Assembly (NCBI GenBank): GCA_907165135.1
Contig: OU015568.1
Coordinates: 6,138,001-6,202,000 of the forward strand
From: Oikopleura dioica
Lineage: Eukaryota > Animalia > Chordata
Length of the DNA stretch: 64,000 nucleotides
Reading direction: 5' to 3'
Part shown: in pieces, positions 1 to 8,086 of the stretch
Layout of the letters: every line of letters starts with the position of its first letter
How positions within the stretch are numbered: the first letter of the stretch is position 1
Notes under the pieces: generated by a model
Database searches by the model: none
What the model was told of the DNA's origin: nothing
The model's input: the letters and a program-made list of their open reading frames with translations, nothing else
Program-made: the position numbers and the translations under genes

Positions 1-70
1 CGAGGATTTTTTGAAAATGACGAGACTTTTCGGCCCAATTTTAATAGACGGGATTCTTCGAGACTGAAAT

Positions 71-3000
71 GATTGTGACCCAAATTTTTAGTGGAATGGA
101 GCGCAGAAGAGCTTTCAATACTTTGAAGCCTCAACGCTCAAAGTTCTATCAGCACTCGGATAATAATCATGGCACTTATTATCGGTTCTTACGGGGCGTA
201 GGAACGGGATTTAACTATTGTGACTCTTTTCAAAGCGGAATGAGGCCAAAAGGGCAATATAAAGCTGATAAAAGTAACATGGAAGTTCACAAGCGTAATT
301 TCAATTCGCACTCGGACCATAACCACGGAACGAATATTGTTCAGTCCGAAATGTTTGCTAGATTAGAGCGGGATATGAAGAATTAATCTTTCCTTCTTAT
401 TGTGGCCCTTTTTCAAAGTGGAATGAGACCCAATGGCACTACAATTCATACATCCGCTATGAGACAGCATCATAAGTGGAATCATTTTTCGAAATTGGAA
501 AAAGGCTTTTGGGCTTTTATAATGAGATATTTTTGTGTACCCTTTCGAAAGCGGAATGAGACCGAGCGGAAAAGATATTCACAAGCACAACTTCAATTCG
601 CACCATTTTCATAACCATGGAACGAATATGATGAAGTCCAAAGTATCCGGCAAATTAGAGCGGGATAGAATCTCAGTCTTGAAAAACACCATTTTCTTAC
701 TCATATCATCTCATATTCATATCATCACTGTCTCCTGATTTCGATAAATCTCGATTGTGACCCCAACTAGTGGCTACGCGGGTGGTTATGAAAACCTTCA
801 TAACAAGAAACTGAATTTCCACAAAAGAACTATGGTCACCCATCACAGGAATAATCATAAATCAGCCGGGGATTGTATTTGTGAAATTTTTGCGAGATGT
901 TTTGTGACTCTGAAAGTCAATCTGCTTGCCGATTTATCCATAAGGGGAGCTTGAATCGACACCACAAAACTCATCATTTGTCGAAAGAATGGGAATTTAG
1001 ACTTGATTGTGACCCATTTGATAGTGGCATTTCTAAAAAAGAGATTTGCCTCAAGAAACAAATCTCGATTGAAAGTGAGAAAAAATATGGCTATTACATC
1101 CACAATAAATCTTTTGTTGGACATCATACCATCCATCATTTGCCAAAAAAAGAATAAAGTCGGGGTTGATTTTTCATTTTTTTTTATTTCGAGGTTGATT
1201 GTGATCCATTGTTAGCGGACTGCATTTCAGAAACAGAGCAATTTACAACAACAAAAAACAATTTTTGCAGCATCACAAAAAACACGGCCATTTTGAAAAA
1301 GGGATTGAAAGTAATTGTGACCTTGTAAAGTGGCGTGGACGTAAGAACAAAATCTAAAATAACCAAAAAACTTCACATGTCTTCGCATCACATCGCTCAT
1401 CATTCGCAAAATACAAGGAAAAAAGCAAAGGGATGAATTTTCAATTCATTGTGATCCTCTAAAGTTCCCCGTCGACTCAAAAACTAGACTTGCATCACTA
1501 CCGCCAGCATATGAAAAAAGTAATGACCAGAGCTCAGATGGGCGAGCTTCTCGGCCCGCGTCTGAAAGCTTTGATTCGCGAAGGGAAGGGGGATGAAATT
1601 GTATTTTGTTAAACGATTGTGGCCCTTTCTAGCGCTATTGATGTTCGATGTAAGAATCCAGCGATAAATGCGAAGCATACGCTCTCCCATCATGTCGCTA
1701 GTCACCTGAATATTCAAAAAATTGGAAAAGCCAACACGGCAATTTTGCTAGAAATTGTTCGAGCCTCTGAAGCGTATCAAGAGTTGGGATGGCTTTTTTC
1801 GCTATCTCTTGTTTTTTTAATTGCGGATTTGATTTTTAAAATTGTGATCCTTTGTCTAGTGGAGTTGATGTAAGAAAGAAAAACCCAATAATCCATCACC
1901 ATAGTTTCCTCTGCCATCACCTGATAAATCACCGTCGAGTTTATATCGCAAGAGGTACTAATGTCGAAACTTTGCGTTTTATGTTGCAAGGGAGGGATTA
2001 TTTTTGGATTGGTTGTGACCTTGAATAAGTGGCTATCGCACTGGGTGCTCAACCTTATCTTTGCACAGAGGACTAATGTTGCAGCATCATCGAAACAACC
2101 ATAAAGGAACGCGGATGAAAGATTTTTATTGTGACCCTCAATCAGTGGTCATCGCACGAGTACAAATAAGATAGTTTTAGATTCAAGAGCTTTGTTTCGC
2201 CACCATCATGCTAACCACGTCGATAAAAATCAGCGTCCCAACTATCGAAAAGAATGGATATCAGTCATTAAAATTGCTAGTTAATTTTTGTAAAAGGTCC
2301 CTTTCAGCGGGTACAGATTGTGATTCTCATTCAGTGGTTATCGGGCGAATGCTCAGAACCAGTTGGTTCTGTATTCATGGATTCTAGGTCGACACCATAG
2401 TACTCACCACATTGAAAAAGAAAAACAGTGCTCTAGCTGCAAAAAAGAATGGATATCAGTCAATCTTATTCCAAGTCCCGGTGATTGTGACTCTTTGTAA
2501 GCGGGTATCAACATCGAAAGCATTCGACCGAAAACTTTCGATTGCATAAAAGCCATTTTATGTCGCATCATGACAGTAACCATTCTTCTGAAAGGGATCG
2601 AAATATTTATTTGAAATTTCGAAGCGTTGAAGGTTTATTTTGATTGTGGCCCTTTCAAAGCACGAATAATTACGACAATGCTTCGATGCTCCGCCATCAC
2701 TTTTCTCGTCACGTGCACTCAAGTTTCCTAAAGTTTCCTTCGAAGAATTATAGCGTTAACGAGCTAAAGAGCTTCGTCTTAGCTTGGGATTAGATTATAG
2801 CAATTGCGGGTGATTGGGACCCTTTTCGAGCGGTTACAATTCGAAAGCGTCGAAGCCTGTTTTCTTCTTCCATAAAAATTACTTTATGAAACATCACAAA
2901 AACAACCATTTTATGGAATGGGACTATTTTTGGTCTGTTTATTACATTTGCGTTGATTGTGACTCTCCGAAGCGGGATGAAGTTGACTGCGAAGCCTAAT

Positions 3001-4492
3001 GGCCGAGGCAACTTCGTGTATCTCCATCATGGCCAAATGATTTACCATCACCTTTCGCATCACGGGGTTCCAGAGAATCTCGAGAAGCCGCTTTACAAAT
3101 GTAACATGAATGACTTCAAGTCAATTTTAGAAGGGATTGAATTTAATTGAACTAATGAGATTGTAATTACGGATGACTTGACATTAAGTGAAATTGTGAC
3201 TCTTAAAAAGTGGCATAAGGGCGAACGGGATGCTAAATAACTTCAATATGCCCCGACACCACTCAAATAACCACACTAATGCTTCTGAAAGAAAAGGCGG
3301 GATTTAAATCAGCCACTCTGCCTTACTTACGATTTACTTACGATTGTGGCCCTGTTTTAAGAGCGTACGATTCTAGGAGCACAAATCGAATGGTCGAGGG
3401 CATTATCTTTAGATTCCACAAAGGCCATATGATGAGGCATCATAACTGTAACCATCTTTCTGATCCCTCAGGTGGGGATCGAATTCATAATGGGAGTTGA
3501 TTGTGACCAAGCTAAAGTGGACTTTCGGAAAAGGGAGCTCCTTTCAGTAATGATATGCTTAGGCACCATTTCTGCAAGCACGAGTTCCTTCCTTTTGCCA
3601 AAAAGTTCAAAGTCGAAGAATTGAAAAGGCGTTTACCAGGTTCGGACTTTCAAAAATTTGAGCAATAAGGATTAGATACTTTTTGGGATGTATATCACAC
3701 GCAGAGTTTAGTTCGGTAAATTGTGACCCTTTGAGCGCTGGGAGGCCAGGAAGAAAGCCAGATGTGGCGATTCAGAGGCGGCATCACCAGCGAAATCATT
3801 TGCAGCATGCCTGCATACTTTGCAAATGATCGGATTCCTGAAAATAGTCATCGGTTTAAGTAGATCATTTTCCAAGAGGAGCATCGATCAAAAAATAACT
3901 CGAAGACAATATCACAGAGGCCATTTTATAAAAATACTTGGGTATATTGTGACCCTTTTAGCGCGGTAAGGCAAGCGAGAAAGCCAGATGTGTCGCTTCT
4001 GAAGCGGCATCACCAGGCACATCATTTGCAGAATAACTGCGTTCAATGGAAATGATCGGATTCTTGACATAATTTTTCGTTATTTTTTGCGGATGATTGG
4101 GATCATTTTCCAAGAGGAGCGACGATCAACATTAATAACTCGAGAATGATAAGACATCATCACAGAAATCACTTCATCAAGACTTACTTAGAATGGGATA
4201 GCCAAAGGCCCCACTTTCGGGACTGATTGTGACCATTTTTAGGGGAGCTACTATTCGAAATTTAACGTACACTAGGATGACAAGGCATCATCATCGAAAC
4301 CACTGTCCACATGGTACTCCTAACTGTTGTCCCGTCAATACGTTAGTTTGGGTTCTTGATCGTCTTCGATTTCTTGTCTCTGATTTCCCTCCTTCGTTTG
4401 GTTCAGTTCGATTGATTATTTTTGCTCTTACCAAAAATTTATCTTTTTTTAAAGTCTCAAATACCGAAATCGAATACCAACCAATATTTTAA
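71..4492 (+). other. Array of 26 intact plus 1 decayed exon-like cassettes, each encoding the His half (recognition helix, H-x4-H) of a BED-type zinc finger
   Basis: Each unit has (G/A/T)ATTGTG(A/G)(C/T)C followed 6-10 nt later by AG. First exon bases: 92, 236, 419, 552, 771, 917, 1025, 1216, 1331, 1465, 1633, 1860, 2030, 2146, 2335, 2502, 2661, 2831, 2973, 3211, 3362, 3518, 3736, 3962, 4115, 4243 (decayed copy at 3877). Skipping one base after the AG (phase 2) gives an open frame through H-[H/S]-x3-H in all 26, e.g. GMRPNGTTIHTSAMRQHHKWNH, GYRTGCSTLSLHRGLMLQHHRNNH, GYNSKASKPVFFFHKNYFMKHHKNNH. His codons vary CAT/CAC. The array continues beyond the window start. Confidence 0.85.
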
Positions 4493-4521
4493 AGGGTTCA
4501 ATTAGATAAAATATTAAAAAG

Positions 4522-6499
4522 TCCACTGTCAAATCCCATACCAAAGCCAGTCAAGCCAAGAATGCTCAGCAGCAACAACAGCAATTGGCCTCACTACAGG
4601 CCGCCCAAGCGGCTCAAAATCTTCCAATGCCTGGCGTCACTGGAATGCCTGGCACTTCTGGACTGAACATTCTCCCTCAGCAAGTGCTGCCAAAACCACC
4701 AAAGCAGCCGAAACAGAAGAAGTCGCCAGCTGGCGGAGTAAAGGCAGCACAGATGCAAGAGTTTGTCGCGATCTGCTCGGATATCATGACGAAAGTGTCC
4801 AAACACGAGCTTCCCGGCGACTTTTGGACTTCCGAGGAAATGTTCGAGTTCGTCTACGGCCTTGTCGAGCGACAACAGCGCGGAGAACCAGTCACTCAAA
4901 TCACCATCGAAGAAGCGCTCGAGTAAGTCTTTTCCTCATCGAACTCTTTTATCAATTTTATTAGTAAACTGAAGACACGCCACGAGTTCAAAGAGCAGAA
5001 CATTCTCGCCATCGAAGACGGAATGGCGCCTCCGACCAAGAAAATGAAAGTGGCAAACGACGAAGACGTCCGCACCATCGTCCAAATCTGGGAAAGCCAG
5101 CCAATGCGGATTTCGCTCGAAGACCATATCTTCCCAAGTAAGACTCTTCAATTTTTGAGCAACACTTTCTATCCTTCAATTTAGTTGACGACTACAGCCA
5201 GTTCTCTATCTCCCGAGTTCGATTGGACGGCGAATGTCTTGGCTTGATGCGATGCAATCATCCTCTCTGCGCCGAAAAGCCACTAGCCGACCGACTTCAC
5301 AAGTAAGCTTGGATGATCTTGTCATCTGTTCATAATGAAATTTAGGATTTGGTTCTCCTCGCGCACCGGGCAGCCACACAAGTACTCGGTCCGTCGCCAC
5401 CACGAGCAGTGCCACTTCGGAAAGATGCTCTCTCGATCTCAAATCATCGACGCTGCTGCCCTTGTGATTTCCGACTCGCAGCTTCCACTCGATAGCTGGT
5501 CCAAGCCATCATTCAAGCACTTCATCTCCAGCTGCGGCCAGTCGACCACTTTCAACAAGAACACGATCTCCGTCGAGGAAATCGTCGCTGCGATGCGAAA
5601 AGCGAATCGACCTCTTTCCGAATCTCATCGAATTGAGCTGATCAACGCTGGAAAAGCGATTCTCATCTACGAAACGGATCCAAACCGGGCTGAAGTGAAA
5701 CCAGAGCCAATCGAGAAGCCGGAAGAAAATGACGGCATTCAAATTGAAGAAATTGAAGGCGGAATCGATGATTCCATGGGAGAAGGTAAATTCTAGCTCC
5801 ATTTATGCTCGCTAACGTTGCTTTTTAGACATGCCCTTGTCCGATTTGCTTAACCAGCCACCGAAACCGCCTGCTCAGCTTTCGCTAGCCGCAGTAACTT
5901 CTGCATCTGGCGATGGCGGAGGAACTGCCACACCATCTGCGGCGTCAGGCGGGATGCCAACTGGTGCCACGGGCACCTCCAACGCTGCAAAGGCTCCACT
6001 TCCTCCCGGGAGCGCCGCGGCGGATGTTGTAGCTGCTGCGAAAGCTGGTAACGCTTCTGCTTCTGGTGGTGCAACTGGGGATCCTCCCGGCGCCGAAAGT
6101 GACGACGACGACCTCGAAGACGAGGATGAAGAGATGGAGGACGAGTCCGACATCCCGATAGACCAGGAGATCGTCAAATATCCTGGGAAGTGCACGGACC
6201 TCTATGCGGTGTACGAACGCTGGGCGCCGATTCTGTCCACAGAAGCGAAAGAAAAGCTCGTGGCGGACTTTTCTCTGAACGATCCTCTGTACCAGAAGCC
6301 AGAGGACATCGAAGACCCGGAACTGCGACTGACGATTCGAGACGAATGGGTGACTGTCTTCCCTGCCTGGCTGGCCAACTTCAAGCCCATGAATGCGAAG
6401 GACGACGGCTTCCAGCGGATACCACTTTCGGACATTCTGGCGATGCGGCGAATGTACAGAACTGAACTTCAAGCCCGCCGCGCTGTCCCTGCGAAATAG
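4522..6499 (+). CDS. BED zinc-finger protein with a hAT-transposase-like helical domain (domesticated hAT derivative); Q-rich N-terminus, low-complexity and acidic C-terminal region
   Basis: Exons approx 4522-4922, 4965-5137, 5185-5302, 5346-5785, 5829-6499, with GT-AG introns of 42-47 bp. Finger: YSQFSISRVRLDGECLGLMRCNHPLC...(phase-2 intron 5303-5345)...IWFSSRTGQPHKYSVRRHHEQCH, followed by LVISDSQLPLDSWSKPSFKHFISSCG, which resembles the post-BED helical domain of hAT transposases. No DDE catalytic region is seen. The 5' start is uncertain and the gene may be joined to upstream exons. Confidence 0.7.
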
Positions 6500-6651
6500 A
6501 AGCAGCTTTTTCAATTTAAATTATTCTACATGTAAACACATCCATTCGGATTTCACACTGCCTTTATCCTGCTTGCAGTTATCTTCTGCCGCCGCTGTAT
6601 CACAAATTAAAAAACTCGAAACTCAGAAAAAATACAAAATTGAAAAAGAAA

Positions 6652-7850
6652 TCAACCGATGACTCGTTCTCTTTTAATCGCCACTTGAAGCAGTTCATTG
6701 AAATCAATTTATTCGGTAAGAAGGTAAATGTAAATCTCAGCATTGTCTCGTTTAACTCGGAATTCACTCTGCATCGGTTCGAATATTTCATCAGGCCAGT
6801 CTGGATTTTCTGATGATTCTATGAGCTCGTCGATTTGCGCGATCTGAGTAAAAATAGTGAACAAAGCGTACTTCAAATAATCACCGTTTTGAGCGAGGTC
6901 TTGTCAAGAAACGCCATCAGAAACCATTTTCCACTGTCCTTGCAATAAATCGGGCTTCCGAATTCTTCAAAGGTTGGAATAAAGCCAACGCCTTCTCTCG
7001 GTGGGTTCCGCGGATTCACTCGCAAAATCGGTCGTCGTTCCGCCTCGTCTCGATCTTGGAAACGGACGTTGATCTTCGCGAAGAAACTGTTTTTCGGATG
7101 ATCTTAATTTTTCGCAATTGATTGAATGGTCAGTCGACTCACTGAGAAAGTAGTGCTCGTATCTATACGATCCAAACAGCACACAGTCTTCGTTTGCTTC
7201 CTGCATTACCTTCTTGTTGTACATTGTCAAGTCCGCGATGGGAGTTATTCTAAAACAGTGTTCCTCTACGATTTCAATTGAACTTACGATGCAGGACGTT
7301 CGAATTCTTCGACGGTTTCGAGAAACATGTGTGTTTCCATTTTCTTGGTCGACTTCACTTTTACGAATTTTCCATGAATTGGCCCAGTTCCTCCGTAAAA
7401 AATGTAGATTTCCCCGTCGGCGACCATCTACAGAGTATAGTTTTATTTTCGCAACAATCCTTCACCTGCTTGAATTTGTCTTCGATATCTTTTGGACTTG
7501 AATTGTGGTTGAGGTTGTCGTCTTTTGGAAAGAAACCGGGCATATAGTGGAACATGTGGTAATCGCATTCAAGCACTAGAAAAAACAGCCTAAATGGACT
7601 TAAATGTTGACAGTATCTTACAAGTGGCGAAATCAGTCTTATCAATGAGAGCTCCCGCGCAACCAAATCTGATGCCCTCGTCGATCCTCGCAATTCTAGC
7701 GTAGTTGTTCAGCATTTTCTTCTCTTCGTCTCCACGCCACGGGAAAGAGTTCTTTTCCATTTCATCGCGATCGGTTAATCTTTCGTTCGTGTACTCTCTC
7801 TTTTGTACCTCGGCCACCAAGAAGTCAGAGCAAAGCAGCTGGAGAAAAGA
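6652..7850 (-). pseudogene. Degenerate trypsin-like serine protease homologue (non-catalytic; frame-disrupted or unusually spliced)
   Basis: Minus-strand pieces ERLTDRDEMEKNSFPW (cf. RIVGG..FPW), RFGCAGALID (cf. CGGSLI) and EEFGSPIYCKDSGKWFLMAF (cf. GDSGGPLVC..W.L.G; catalytic Ser motif absent). The frames do not join cleanly. Confidence 0.45.
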
Positions 7851-8086
7851 AATAAAATTAAGTTTTTCATGAAAATGGCAAATTATGACTAGTTTAGAAA
7901 GAAAATGAAGATGTTTAGCTTTTTCGTACAAAAAGCGCAAAAGATATCAGATGCTCTAGAAATCATCGCGTTTGAAAACGGAGATTTGAGAAAATCAGCC
8001 GATGACTCGTATATTTTTCAAACTCGCCACTTGAAGCAGGTCAATGACAAAAGCAATATCCGCAACATTCAAAAAGCCGAACTATC

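What the first reader, a model, noticed from the sequence alone, without database searches (positions are those of the whole stretch)
4243..5345. The matching Cys half-finger lies downstream of the cassette array, so trans-splicing or an unseen upstream paralogous exon is required
The only C-x4-C half-finger in view is exon 5185-5302 (…RCNHPLCAEKPLADRLH-AA|GTAAGC). Its donor is phase 2, and AA plus the first cassette base (T/C/A/G) gives Asn or Lys with no stop, so every cassette is frame-compatible. However, the cassettes are 5' of this donor on the same strand, so cis-splicing from it cannot reach them. Options: (a) trans-splicing, as established for mod(mdg4) and lola; (b) a second constant Cys exon upstream of the window, making this a two-finger gene; (c) back-splicing or DNA-level rearrangement or gene conversion.
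Basis: partly seen in the sequence, partly recalled or inferred. Interest (0 to 1): 0.85.

Follow-up and report, generated by a model that had tools for sequence, protein, structure and literature searches.

The report
Second, constant zinc-finger half; no trans-splicing
The cysteine half-finger exon downstream of the cassette array belongs to a second, complete copy of the finger and splices normally to its own partner, while the cassettes are most likely served by a sister exon upstream of the window, so no trans-splicing is needed.

Summary
Exon 5185-5302 is real, has a phase-2 donor and is the only Cys half-finger in the window, and about 26 cassettes lie 5' of it on the same strand. Four mRNA contigs carry that junction.

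The cassettes' partner was seen in orthologous Oikopleura dioica loci, not in this window. It is a paralogous constant Cys exon (53% identical, same phases) upstream of the array. Its GC donor is followed by a docking site complementary to the GATTGTGACC tag before every window cassette (duplex -24.5 against -12.0 kcal/mol for controls). Two metatranscriptome contigs join that exon to a cassette. One is a full-length mRNA that runs on, spacer unspliced, through the orthologues of exons 4547-6499.

Trans-splicing, back-splicing and rearrangement are not: the 5302 intron has no docking site.

Still open is whether a two-finger fusion protein is made. The array and docking site were already reported by this scan from the adjoining window (s1-403960, s1-403961).

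The parts
1..4242 (+). Distal part of the cassette array, which runs off the left edge of the window. There are about 26 units. Each has a GGGAT-type motif, a GATTGTGACC selector, an AG acceptor and a phase-2 His-half coding piece (..HHxxxH..).
   Evidence: The Bergen docking site pairs with the 60 nt before each acceptor at a mean of -24.5 kcal/mol, against -12.0 (sd 3.7) for controls. Only 2 AATAAA and 2 ATTAAA occur in the 4.5 kb from the window start to the exon-4547 acceptor.
4243..4313 (+). Last cassette (..TRMTRHHHRNHCPH). CATG|GTACTC at 4313|4314 is a possible phase-1 donor, but it is unverified.
   Evidence: The phase fits the acceptor at 4547. If the spacer stays unspliced, the reading frame stops at 4492.
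4314..4546 (+). Spacer between the last cassette and exon 4547. It is retained in the three orthologous mRNA contigs. Its last 30 nt (4517-4546) belong to a 45-nt block that is almost invariant between lineages.
   Evidence: RNA reads continue unspliced past 4516 (13-17 reads per run).
4547..4922 (+). Exon e1, with a phase-1 acceptor (AG|CCAGTC). It is coding from its first base and has no in-frame ATG before 4629. In the Bergen lineage there is none before MTKVSKH.
   Evidence: synonymous changes, and indels of 6, 9, 12 and 63 nt. Reads break at 4544/4545 with mixed upstream letters.
4965..5137 (+). Exon e2 (DKLKTRHEF..ISLEDHIFP).
   Evidence: The junctions are contiguous in L010, L007 and L008.
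5185..5302 (+). Exon e3, the Cys half of the constant finger (LDGECLGLMRCNHPLCAEKP). It has a phase-1 acceptor and a phase-2 GT donor. This is the exon of the finding.
   Evidence: It is 53% identical over 38 aa (E 1e-7) to the upstream constant exon of the Bergen locus.
5303..5345 (+). Ordinary 43-nt GT-AG intron with no docking site. It holds a sense, selector-like stretch (GGATGATCTTGTCATC) that is absent from the Bergen orthologue.
5346..5785 (+). Exon e4. It opens with the His half (PHKYSVRRHHEQCHF), homologous to the cassettes, and continues into a conserved domain.
   Evidence: The junction ADRLHK|IWFSS is contiguous in mRNA contigs L002, L007, L008 and L010.
5829..6499 (+). Exon e5, the C-terminal domain and stop codon. 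ATTAAA lies at 6606.
   Evidence: The loose end behind 5785 in the RNA reads equals the orthologue of this exon's start.

Best explanation
The locus carries two tandem paralogous copies of one split zinc finger, on one transcription unit.

Unit 1 starts left of the window. Exon 1 (with the ATG) is followed by a constant Cys-half exon whose GC donor (phase 2, ...TTTTTTAG|GCAAGG) sits directly before a docking site (GGGTCACAATCATCC). One of many downstream acceptors is chosen. Each is preceded by a complementary selector (GGAT..GATTGTGACCC) and opens a different His half. The window holds the last ~26 of these.

Unit 2 is constant. Exon 5185-5302 (Cys half) is spliced in cis across a 43-nt intron to exon 5346 (His half).

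The cassettes therefore never need the 5302 donor.

Shown: the cis junction of unit 2; the upstream exon, its docking site and two of its junctions to cassettes, all in orthologous lineages; and complementarity of that docking site to the window's own selectors.

Inferred: that the same exon lies about 5.9 kb left of this window (scan notes only), and that pairing drives the choice of acceptor.
For: Unit 2 is complete in cis.
- Exon 5346 begins with the His half.
- The junction is contiguous in L002, L007, L008 and L010 and in proteins P0002, P0003 and P0007-P0009.

Upstream paralogous exon.
- L006 (Bergen genome) has exon 1 at 2516-2808 and a constant Cys exon at 2957-3075. The docking site follows at once, and selectors then run down to the orthologue of exon 4547.
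- The same exon and docking site occur in L009 and L012.
- The exon is 53% identical to 5185-5302 and has the same phases.

Transcripts.
- L010 joins exon 1, the Cys exon and the last cassette, then carries the spacer and e1-e5 down to AATAAA.
- L011 joins the Cys exon to another cassette.
- P0012 is the form with that intron retained.

Pairing and signals.
- Docking site against the window's selectors: mean -24.5 kcal/mol; controls -12.0, sd 3.7, minimum -23.2.
- The 5302 intron against the selectors: median about -14. One outlier at -31 lies within the control range.
- The array has almost no poly(A) signals.
Against: - The upstream exon of this very lineage lies outside the window, and I could not fetch it. 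The claim rests on orthologous loci, on the fit of their docking site to this window's selectors, and on unchecked scan notes.
- The RNA runs available are from another lineage. They covered only 4516-4587 and 5725-5785, with almost no depth at 5302 or over the cassettes. Rare joints from 5302 in this lineage are therefore not excluded.
- Metatranscriptome contigs are assemblies and could mix mature and nascent RNA.
Confidence: 0.85

Rival explanations
1. Trans-splicing, back-splicing or DNA rearrangement joins the 5302 donor to the upstream cassettes.
For: Only the topology and the phase compatibility. One cassette region (before 4115) can pair with the 5302 intron at -31 kcal/mol.
Against: - A conventional upstream donor with a docking site exists in the orthologues and is seen spliced to cassettes.
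- Every transcript found joins 5302 to 5346.
- The -31 duplex lies within the range for random 43-mers (mean -23.7, minimum -37), and the other 24 cassettes pair weakly.
- The selector-like stretch in that intron is in the sense orientation and is absent from the Bergen orthologue.
Confidence: 0.03
2. Dscam-like internal cassettes. After the constant exon is joined to a cassette, a donor at the cassette's 3' end (the GGGAT region, or G|GT as at 4313|4314) is spliced to the acceptor at 4547. This gives two-finger fusion proteins: variable finger 1 followed by constant finger 2.
For: - e1 is coding from its first base and has no ATG of its own in the Bergen lineage.
- Reads break at the 4547 acceptor with heterogeneous upstream letters in 17-27 reads per run.
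- The last window cassette has a phase-1 GT donor.
- The cassettes lack poly(A) signals.
Against: - No transcript or protein with a cassette-to-e1 junction was found.
- L010, L007 and L008 keep the spacer, and L011 keeps more than 2.3 kb of downstream cassettes.
- GGGAT has no fixed phase: 12-13, 4 and 6 cassettes fall in phases 0, 1 and 2.
- Four cassettes have a stop before GGGAT.
- GGGAT pairs with ATCC of the docking site as a second selector arm.
Confidence: 0.3
3. One long intron with many alternative 3' splice sites. The cassettes have no donor, the short one-finger protein ends at a stop in or after the cassette, and the rest of the array stays in the RNA. The long constant-finger protein comes from another isoform, for example exon 1 (phase-1 donor) joined directly to 4547 (phase-1 acceptor), which is in frame.
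For: - L010 and L011 have this structure.
- ORF1 of L010 is 181 aa and ends before the spacer.
- The phases of exon 1 and e1 match.
- In another appendicularian species the constant-finger protein is made from a stand-alone mRNA (L002).
Against: - No exon1-to-e1 transcript was found.
- The loose ends at 4544/4545 are heterogeneous and do not match the exon 1 end.
- Very long 3' regions full of unused acceptors would be unusual.
Confidence: 0.4
4. Two independent neighbouring genes that arose by tandem duplication. Transcripts spanning both would be incidental read-through.
For: - The Bergen annotation models only the downstream gene (P0009).
- L002 is a stand-alone mRNA in another species.
- A partial duplicate of e2-e4 exists elsewhere in the Bergen assembly (L001).
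Against: - The full-length contig L010 spans both units under one poly(A) signal.
- Poly(A) signals are nearly absent from the 4.5 kb between the window start and the exon-4547 acceptor, which includes the spacer before e1.
- e1 lacks a start codon in the Bergen lineage although its 5' part is conserved as protein.
Confidence: 0.15

Closest known systems
Competing RNA pairings at 3' variable regions of Drosophila PGRP-LC, CG42235 and Pip (Pan et al. 2018, PMC6191721)
   Same: A docking site lies in the intron next to the last constant donor, and selectors lie before alternative downstream acceptors. Pairing activates one 3' splice site.
   Different: Here there are tens of alternatives rather than three. 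The organism is a chordate. The splice point cuts a zinc finger in two. No separate poly(A) sites are seen. A paralogous complete finger follows on the same transcript.
Dscam1 exon 6 docking site and selector sequences (arthropods; PMC8791459 and PMC12962786 for recent work)
   Same: There is one docking site after the constant exon. A complementary selector precedes each of many tandemly duplicated variable exons.
   Different: Inclusion as an internal exon between two constant exons is not shown here. The transcripts found keep the downstream sequence unspliced.
mod(mdg4) and lola trans-splicing in Drosophila
   Same: The protein logic is the same: a common N-terminus with many alternative zinc-finger C-termini.
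   Different: Those loci join separate pre-mRNAs and swap whole fingers or domains. Here the cassettes lie downstream of their real donor on the same strand, and a plain cis reaction explains the junctions seen.
BED-type zinc fingers of hAT transposases and ZBED proteins
   Same: The pattern is Cys pair ... His-x3-His with a long spacer, followed by a helical region. There is a weak language-model resemblance (scores 0.77-0.78).
   Different: No Pfam or PDB sequence match was found. The Cys spacing is x4 with a third invariant Cys, and the Cys-to-His spacer is about 28 residues.

Membership tests
mod(mdg4)/lola-type trans-spliced loci | The variable exons cannot be reached in cis from the common donor (other strand, upstream position or a separate transcription unit). 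| tested here: not met
   In the orthologous locus L006 the real constant donor lies upstream of the whole array on the same strand. Only the paralogous donor 5302 lies downstream.
mod(mdg4)/lola-type trans-spliced loci | Chimeric mRNAs are formed from two pre-mRNAs. | tested here: inconclusive
   No such junction appears in any contig or protein found. The RNA runs were of another lineage and barely covered 5302.
Docking-site/selector (competing RNA pairing) splicing | A single docking site lies in the intron next to the constant exon. | tested here: met
   GCAAGGGTCACAATCATCC follows the donor directly in L006, L009 and L012. This is in orthologues, not in this window.
Docking-site/selector (competing RNA pairing) splicing | A selector complementary to the docking site precedes each alternative acceptor. 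| tested here: met
   All 26 window acceptors: mean duplex -24.5 kcal/mol, weakest -15.3. For 500 controls the mean is -12.0 with sd 3.7.
Docking-site/selector (competing RNA pairing) splicing | Pairing is required for exon choice (mutation and compensatory mutation). | not testable with these tools
   Needs minigenes or genome editing.
Mutually exclusive internal cassette exons (Dscam type) | The chosen exon is spliced on to a downstream constant exon, with exactly one exon per mRNA. | tested here: inconclusive
   L010 and L011 show one acceptor used and no downstream splice. Heterogeneous read ends at 4544/4545 hint at spliced forms.
zf-BED (PF02892) | A match to the family profile above the gathering score. 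| tested here: not met
   No hit for the exon pieces, for P0003, P0008 or P0009, or for ORF1 at E up to 1.

The most novel reading that the evidence does not exclude
The locus uses RNA pairing at both ends of the array. The upstream docking site picks an acceptor. A second pairing then zips the chosen cassette to exon 4547 through a non-canonical donor. This pairing would be between GGGAT(TTG) at each cassette's 3' end and CAAATCCC, which lies in the near-invariant 45-nt block just before the 4547 acceptor. One pre-mRNA would then yield a library of two-finger proteins (variable finger 1 plus constant finger 2) beside the short one-finger forms.
Probability: 0.15. Interest if true: 0.85.

Novelty: new variant of a known kind. 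Interest (0 to 1): 0.5.

Why it matters
- It removes the need for an exotic mechanism (trans-splicing) at a locus that is still remarkable. A chordate gene appears to choose among dozens of alternative halves of a zinc finger by RNA base-pairing, something documented experimentally only in arthropods in the papers I found.
- The constant downstream finger is a paralogue of the variable one and rides on the same transcript. This gives a built-in reference for how the array arose, by duplication of a split finger.
- It also gives a concrete question to test: are one-finger and two-finger proteins both made?

Tried and rejected
- RNA reads. The only usable raw-read runs (X4-X6, X1) come from a divergent lineage. 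They map at 90-95% on two short stretches only, so no junction table was obtained. The heterogeneous loose-end consensus strings match nothing in L006-L011 or the window at up to 9 mismatches in 30. They also do not match the O. dioica spliced leader given in PMC6883708.
- Reaching the window's own upstream DNA. L001 is a partial duplicate holding e2-e4 only. L003, L004, L005 and L013-L016 are short metagenome contigs.
- GGGAT as a fixed-phase donor. Rejected as a general rule because the phases are mixed and some cassettes have a stop before it. It pairs with ATCC of the docking site in many cassettes.
- A second docking site in the spacer (GGGTTCAATT). Mean duplex -14.8 against -13.9 (sd 1.8) for controls, so not significant.
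- The block CAAATCCC against GGGAT segments. Mean -11.2 against -7.3 for random targets, but -9.5 (sd 1.6) for random blocks, so weak.
- A docking role for the 5302 intron. Rejected.
- Fold of the finger. The AlphaFold model had mean pLDDT 57.9, too low for a fold search. Pfam, PDB sequence and profile searches were blank.
- Literature. No paper was found describing this locus.
Full report
**What is in the window**

The window reads like Oikopleura dioica. Introns are about 43 nt long, and earlier scan notes and the NCBI names of the closest proteins agree.

On the + strand, positions 72-4233 hold 24 matches to ATTGTGAC with at most one mismatch. The rest of the window shows only background. 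Each match is followed within 6-12 nt by an AG. After that AG comes a phase-2 reading frame of the type G...HHxxxH, about 26 units in all, and the array runs off the left edge.

Downstream lie five exons:
- e1, 4547-4922
- e2, 4965-5137
- e3, 5185-5302
- e4, 5346-5785
- e5, 5829-6499

ATTAAA lies at 6606.

**Check of the observation**

The acceptor is tttag|TTGACG, the donor is CACAA|GTAAGC in phase 2, and the coding sequence is ..LDGECLGLMRCNHPLCAEKPLADRLH. It is the only such exon in the 64 kb window (tblastn).

e4 begins IWFSSRTGQPHKYSVRRHHEQCHF. This His half aligns with the cassettes, and K, HH and H are invariant across both kinds of unit. The finger that starts in e3 is therefore completed in cis, across an ordinary 43-nt GT-AG intron.

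That junction is contiguous in four transcript contigs:
- L002, a Logan RNA contig from another appendicularian species
- L007, L008 and L010, which are JGI metatranscriptome contigs

It is also contiguous in the annotated O. dioica proteins P0002 and P0009.

**Where the cassettes' real partner is**

I could not read the DNA left of the window, so I fetched the orthologous locus of the Bergen reference genome (L006, FN653025.1). It has the same layout: an array of (A/T)TTGTGACCC selectors ending directly upstream of the orthologue of e1.

Upstream of that array lie two exons:
- Exon 1, ATG at 2516 to 2808, with a phase-1 donor.
- A constant exon at 2957-3075 that reads VDDNPVFDAARVFLDGECQNLVYCCDPKCAEKPTFKRFF plus AG.

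The constant exon is a paralogue of e3. It is 53% identical over 38 residues (E 1e-7) and has the same phase-1 acceptor and phase-2 donor. Its donor is GC (AG|GCAAGG). The intron continues at once with GGGTCACAATCATCC, the reverse complement of the selector.

The same exon and docking site occur in two further genomic sources (L009 and L012). They also appear, translated, in P0012 and P0022.

**Transcript evidence**

L010 is a 2753-nt metatranscriptome contig with a 5' UTR and a terminal AATAAA. It reads exon 1 | constant Cys exon | last cassette, with the junction ...CGATTTTTTAG|AGCTTTTAGAG. A stop follows, then the unspliced spacer, then e1|e2|e3|e4|e5.

L011 joins the same constant exon to a different, proximal cassette (...TTTTTTAG|CCCCTTCAAACC). 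It then runs unspliced through more than 2.3 kb of further cassettes.

So the donor that serves the cassettes is the upstream paralogue, by plain cis-splicing. The residue created at the junction is Ser or Arg (AG+N), not Asn or Lys.

**Does this apply to the window's own lineage?**

The Bergen docking sequence pairs with the 60 nt before each of the 26 window acceptors at a mean of -24.5 kcal/mol, and the weakest is -15.3. For 500 control sites in the window the mean is -12.0, sd 3.7, best -23.2. The window's selectors are thus tuned to that docking sequence.

Scan notes s1-403961 and s1-404053 place a donor-adjacent docking site about 5.9 kb left of the window. I treat these as a lead that agrees with my test, not as proof.

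The intron after e3 has no such property. Its median duplex with the selector regions is about -14. One outlier at -31 lies within the range of random 43-mers. Its selector-like stretch is in the sense orientation and is missing from the Bergen orthologue.

**The GGGAT motif**

Another note read this motif as a non-canonical donor. Three observations speak against a fixed-phase donor:
- Cut as GG|GAT, its phase relative to the cassette frame is mixed: 12-13 cassettes in phase 0, 4 in phase 1 and 6 in phase 2.
- Four cassettes have a stop before it.
- The reverse complement of the full docking region contains GGATGATTGTGACCC. In many cassettes the predicted duplex includes GGAT paired with ATCC as a second arm across an internal loop.

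I therefore read GGGAT mainly as the 5' end of the next selector. A donor role is not excluded.

**What remains open**

The first open point is how e1 is translated.
- e1 is coding from its first base. Between lineages the changes are synonymous in one frame, and all indels are multiples of three: 6, 9, 12 and 63 nt.
- In the Bergen lineage there is no in-frame ATG before MTKVSKH.
- The retained spacer has an in-frame stop.

Some phase-1 donor must therefore feed the acceptor at 4547. The candidates are exon 1, whose phase fits, or donors in the cassettes. The last window cassette has CATG|GTACTC at 4313|4314, which is in phase.

The second open point is what the RNA reads show at that acceptor. 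Reads of another lineage break at 4544/4545 with heterogeneous upstream letters in 17-27 reads per run. Another 13-17 reads per run continue unspliced. I could not assign the heterogeneous letters to any sequence, and they do not match the spliced leader. No contig or protein with a cassette-e1 or exon1-e1 junction turned up.

The array has almost no poly(A) signals. The cassettes are therefore not independent terminal exons.

Taken together, a single transcription unit is well supported. A two-finger fusion protein is not yet shown.

**Family of the finger**

Pfam, PDB sequence and PDB profile searches give nothing. The AlphaFold model is of low confidence (pLDDT 57.9). zf-BED appears only as a weak language-model lead. 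I leave the family unassigned.

**Comparison and novelty**

The mechanism resembles the competing RNA pairings described for Drosophila 3' variable regions (PMC6191721) and for the Dscam1 exon 6 cluster. I found no paper on such a system in Oikopleura.

The array and docking site were already reported by this scan from the adjoining window. This report adds five points:
- The downstream Cys exon belongs to a constant paralogous finger.
- Trans-splicing is unnecessary.
- Both units share one mRNA.
- GGGAT is probably a selector arm.
- e1 needs an upstream coding partner.

Noticed in passing
window 4517-4562 (also L006 9786-9831, L007, L008, L010): A 45-nt block (AAAAGTCCACTGTCAAATCCCATACCAAAG|CCAGTCAAGCCAAGAA) spans the e1 acceptor. 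It is almost invariant between lineages whose coding DNA is only about 75% identical. Its CAAATCCC is complementary to GGGATTTG at cassette 3' ends.
   Followed up: partly
L009 2560-2970 (Bergen-type array, inside the cassette region): An intron-less reading frame encodes a complete, unsplit finger (..YLQCDHDNCLDNPKSHFYRAGRLNPKGKTIYDKAITLRHEVRNHIG) followed by a normal cassette (SGYRTHTLKKYAMISHHKKNH). It may be a processed copy or an ancestral unsplit unit.
   Followed up: partly
L001 9987-10813 (FN653195.1, Bergen assembly): A second, partial copy of the constant-finger gene (e2-e4 only, 75% DNA identity to the window). It has no array upstream and lacks e1 and e5. It is annotated as a 276-aa protein (P0002).
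   Followed up: partly
L011 505-516, L012 2533-2544 (constant Cys exon): The codons for CCDP in the constant exon read TGCTGTGACCCG. This is a sense copy of the selector core TGTGACCC, about 55 nt upstream of the docking site. It could fold back on the docking site, as scan note s1-404053 suggested.
   Followed up: no
L002 (Logan SRR26381724 contig, 1459 nt): In another appendicularian species the constant-finger protein (454 aa, 60% identical in e4) is made from a stand-alone mRNA. Its ATG lies in the e2 equivalent and an in-frame stop precedes it. There is no e1.
   Followed up: partly
L013 900-1425: In one Tara-type lineage, intron 1 of the gene holds an insertion with long inverted repeats (MITE-like).
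   Followed up: no
window 6650-7870, minus strand: Several short ORFs with intron-like breaks suggest a convergent gene on the minus strand, starting just after the poly(A) signal of the finger gene.
   Followed up: no
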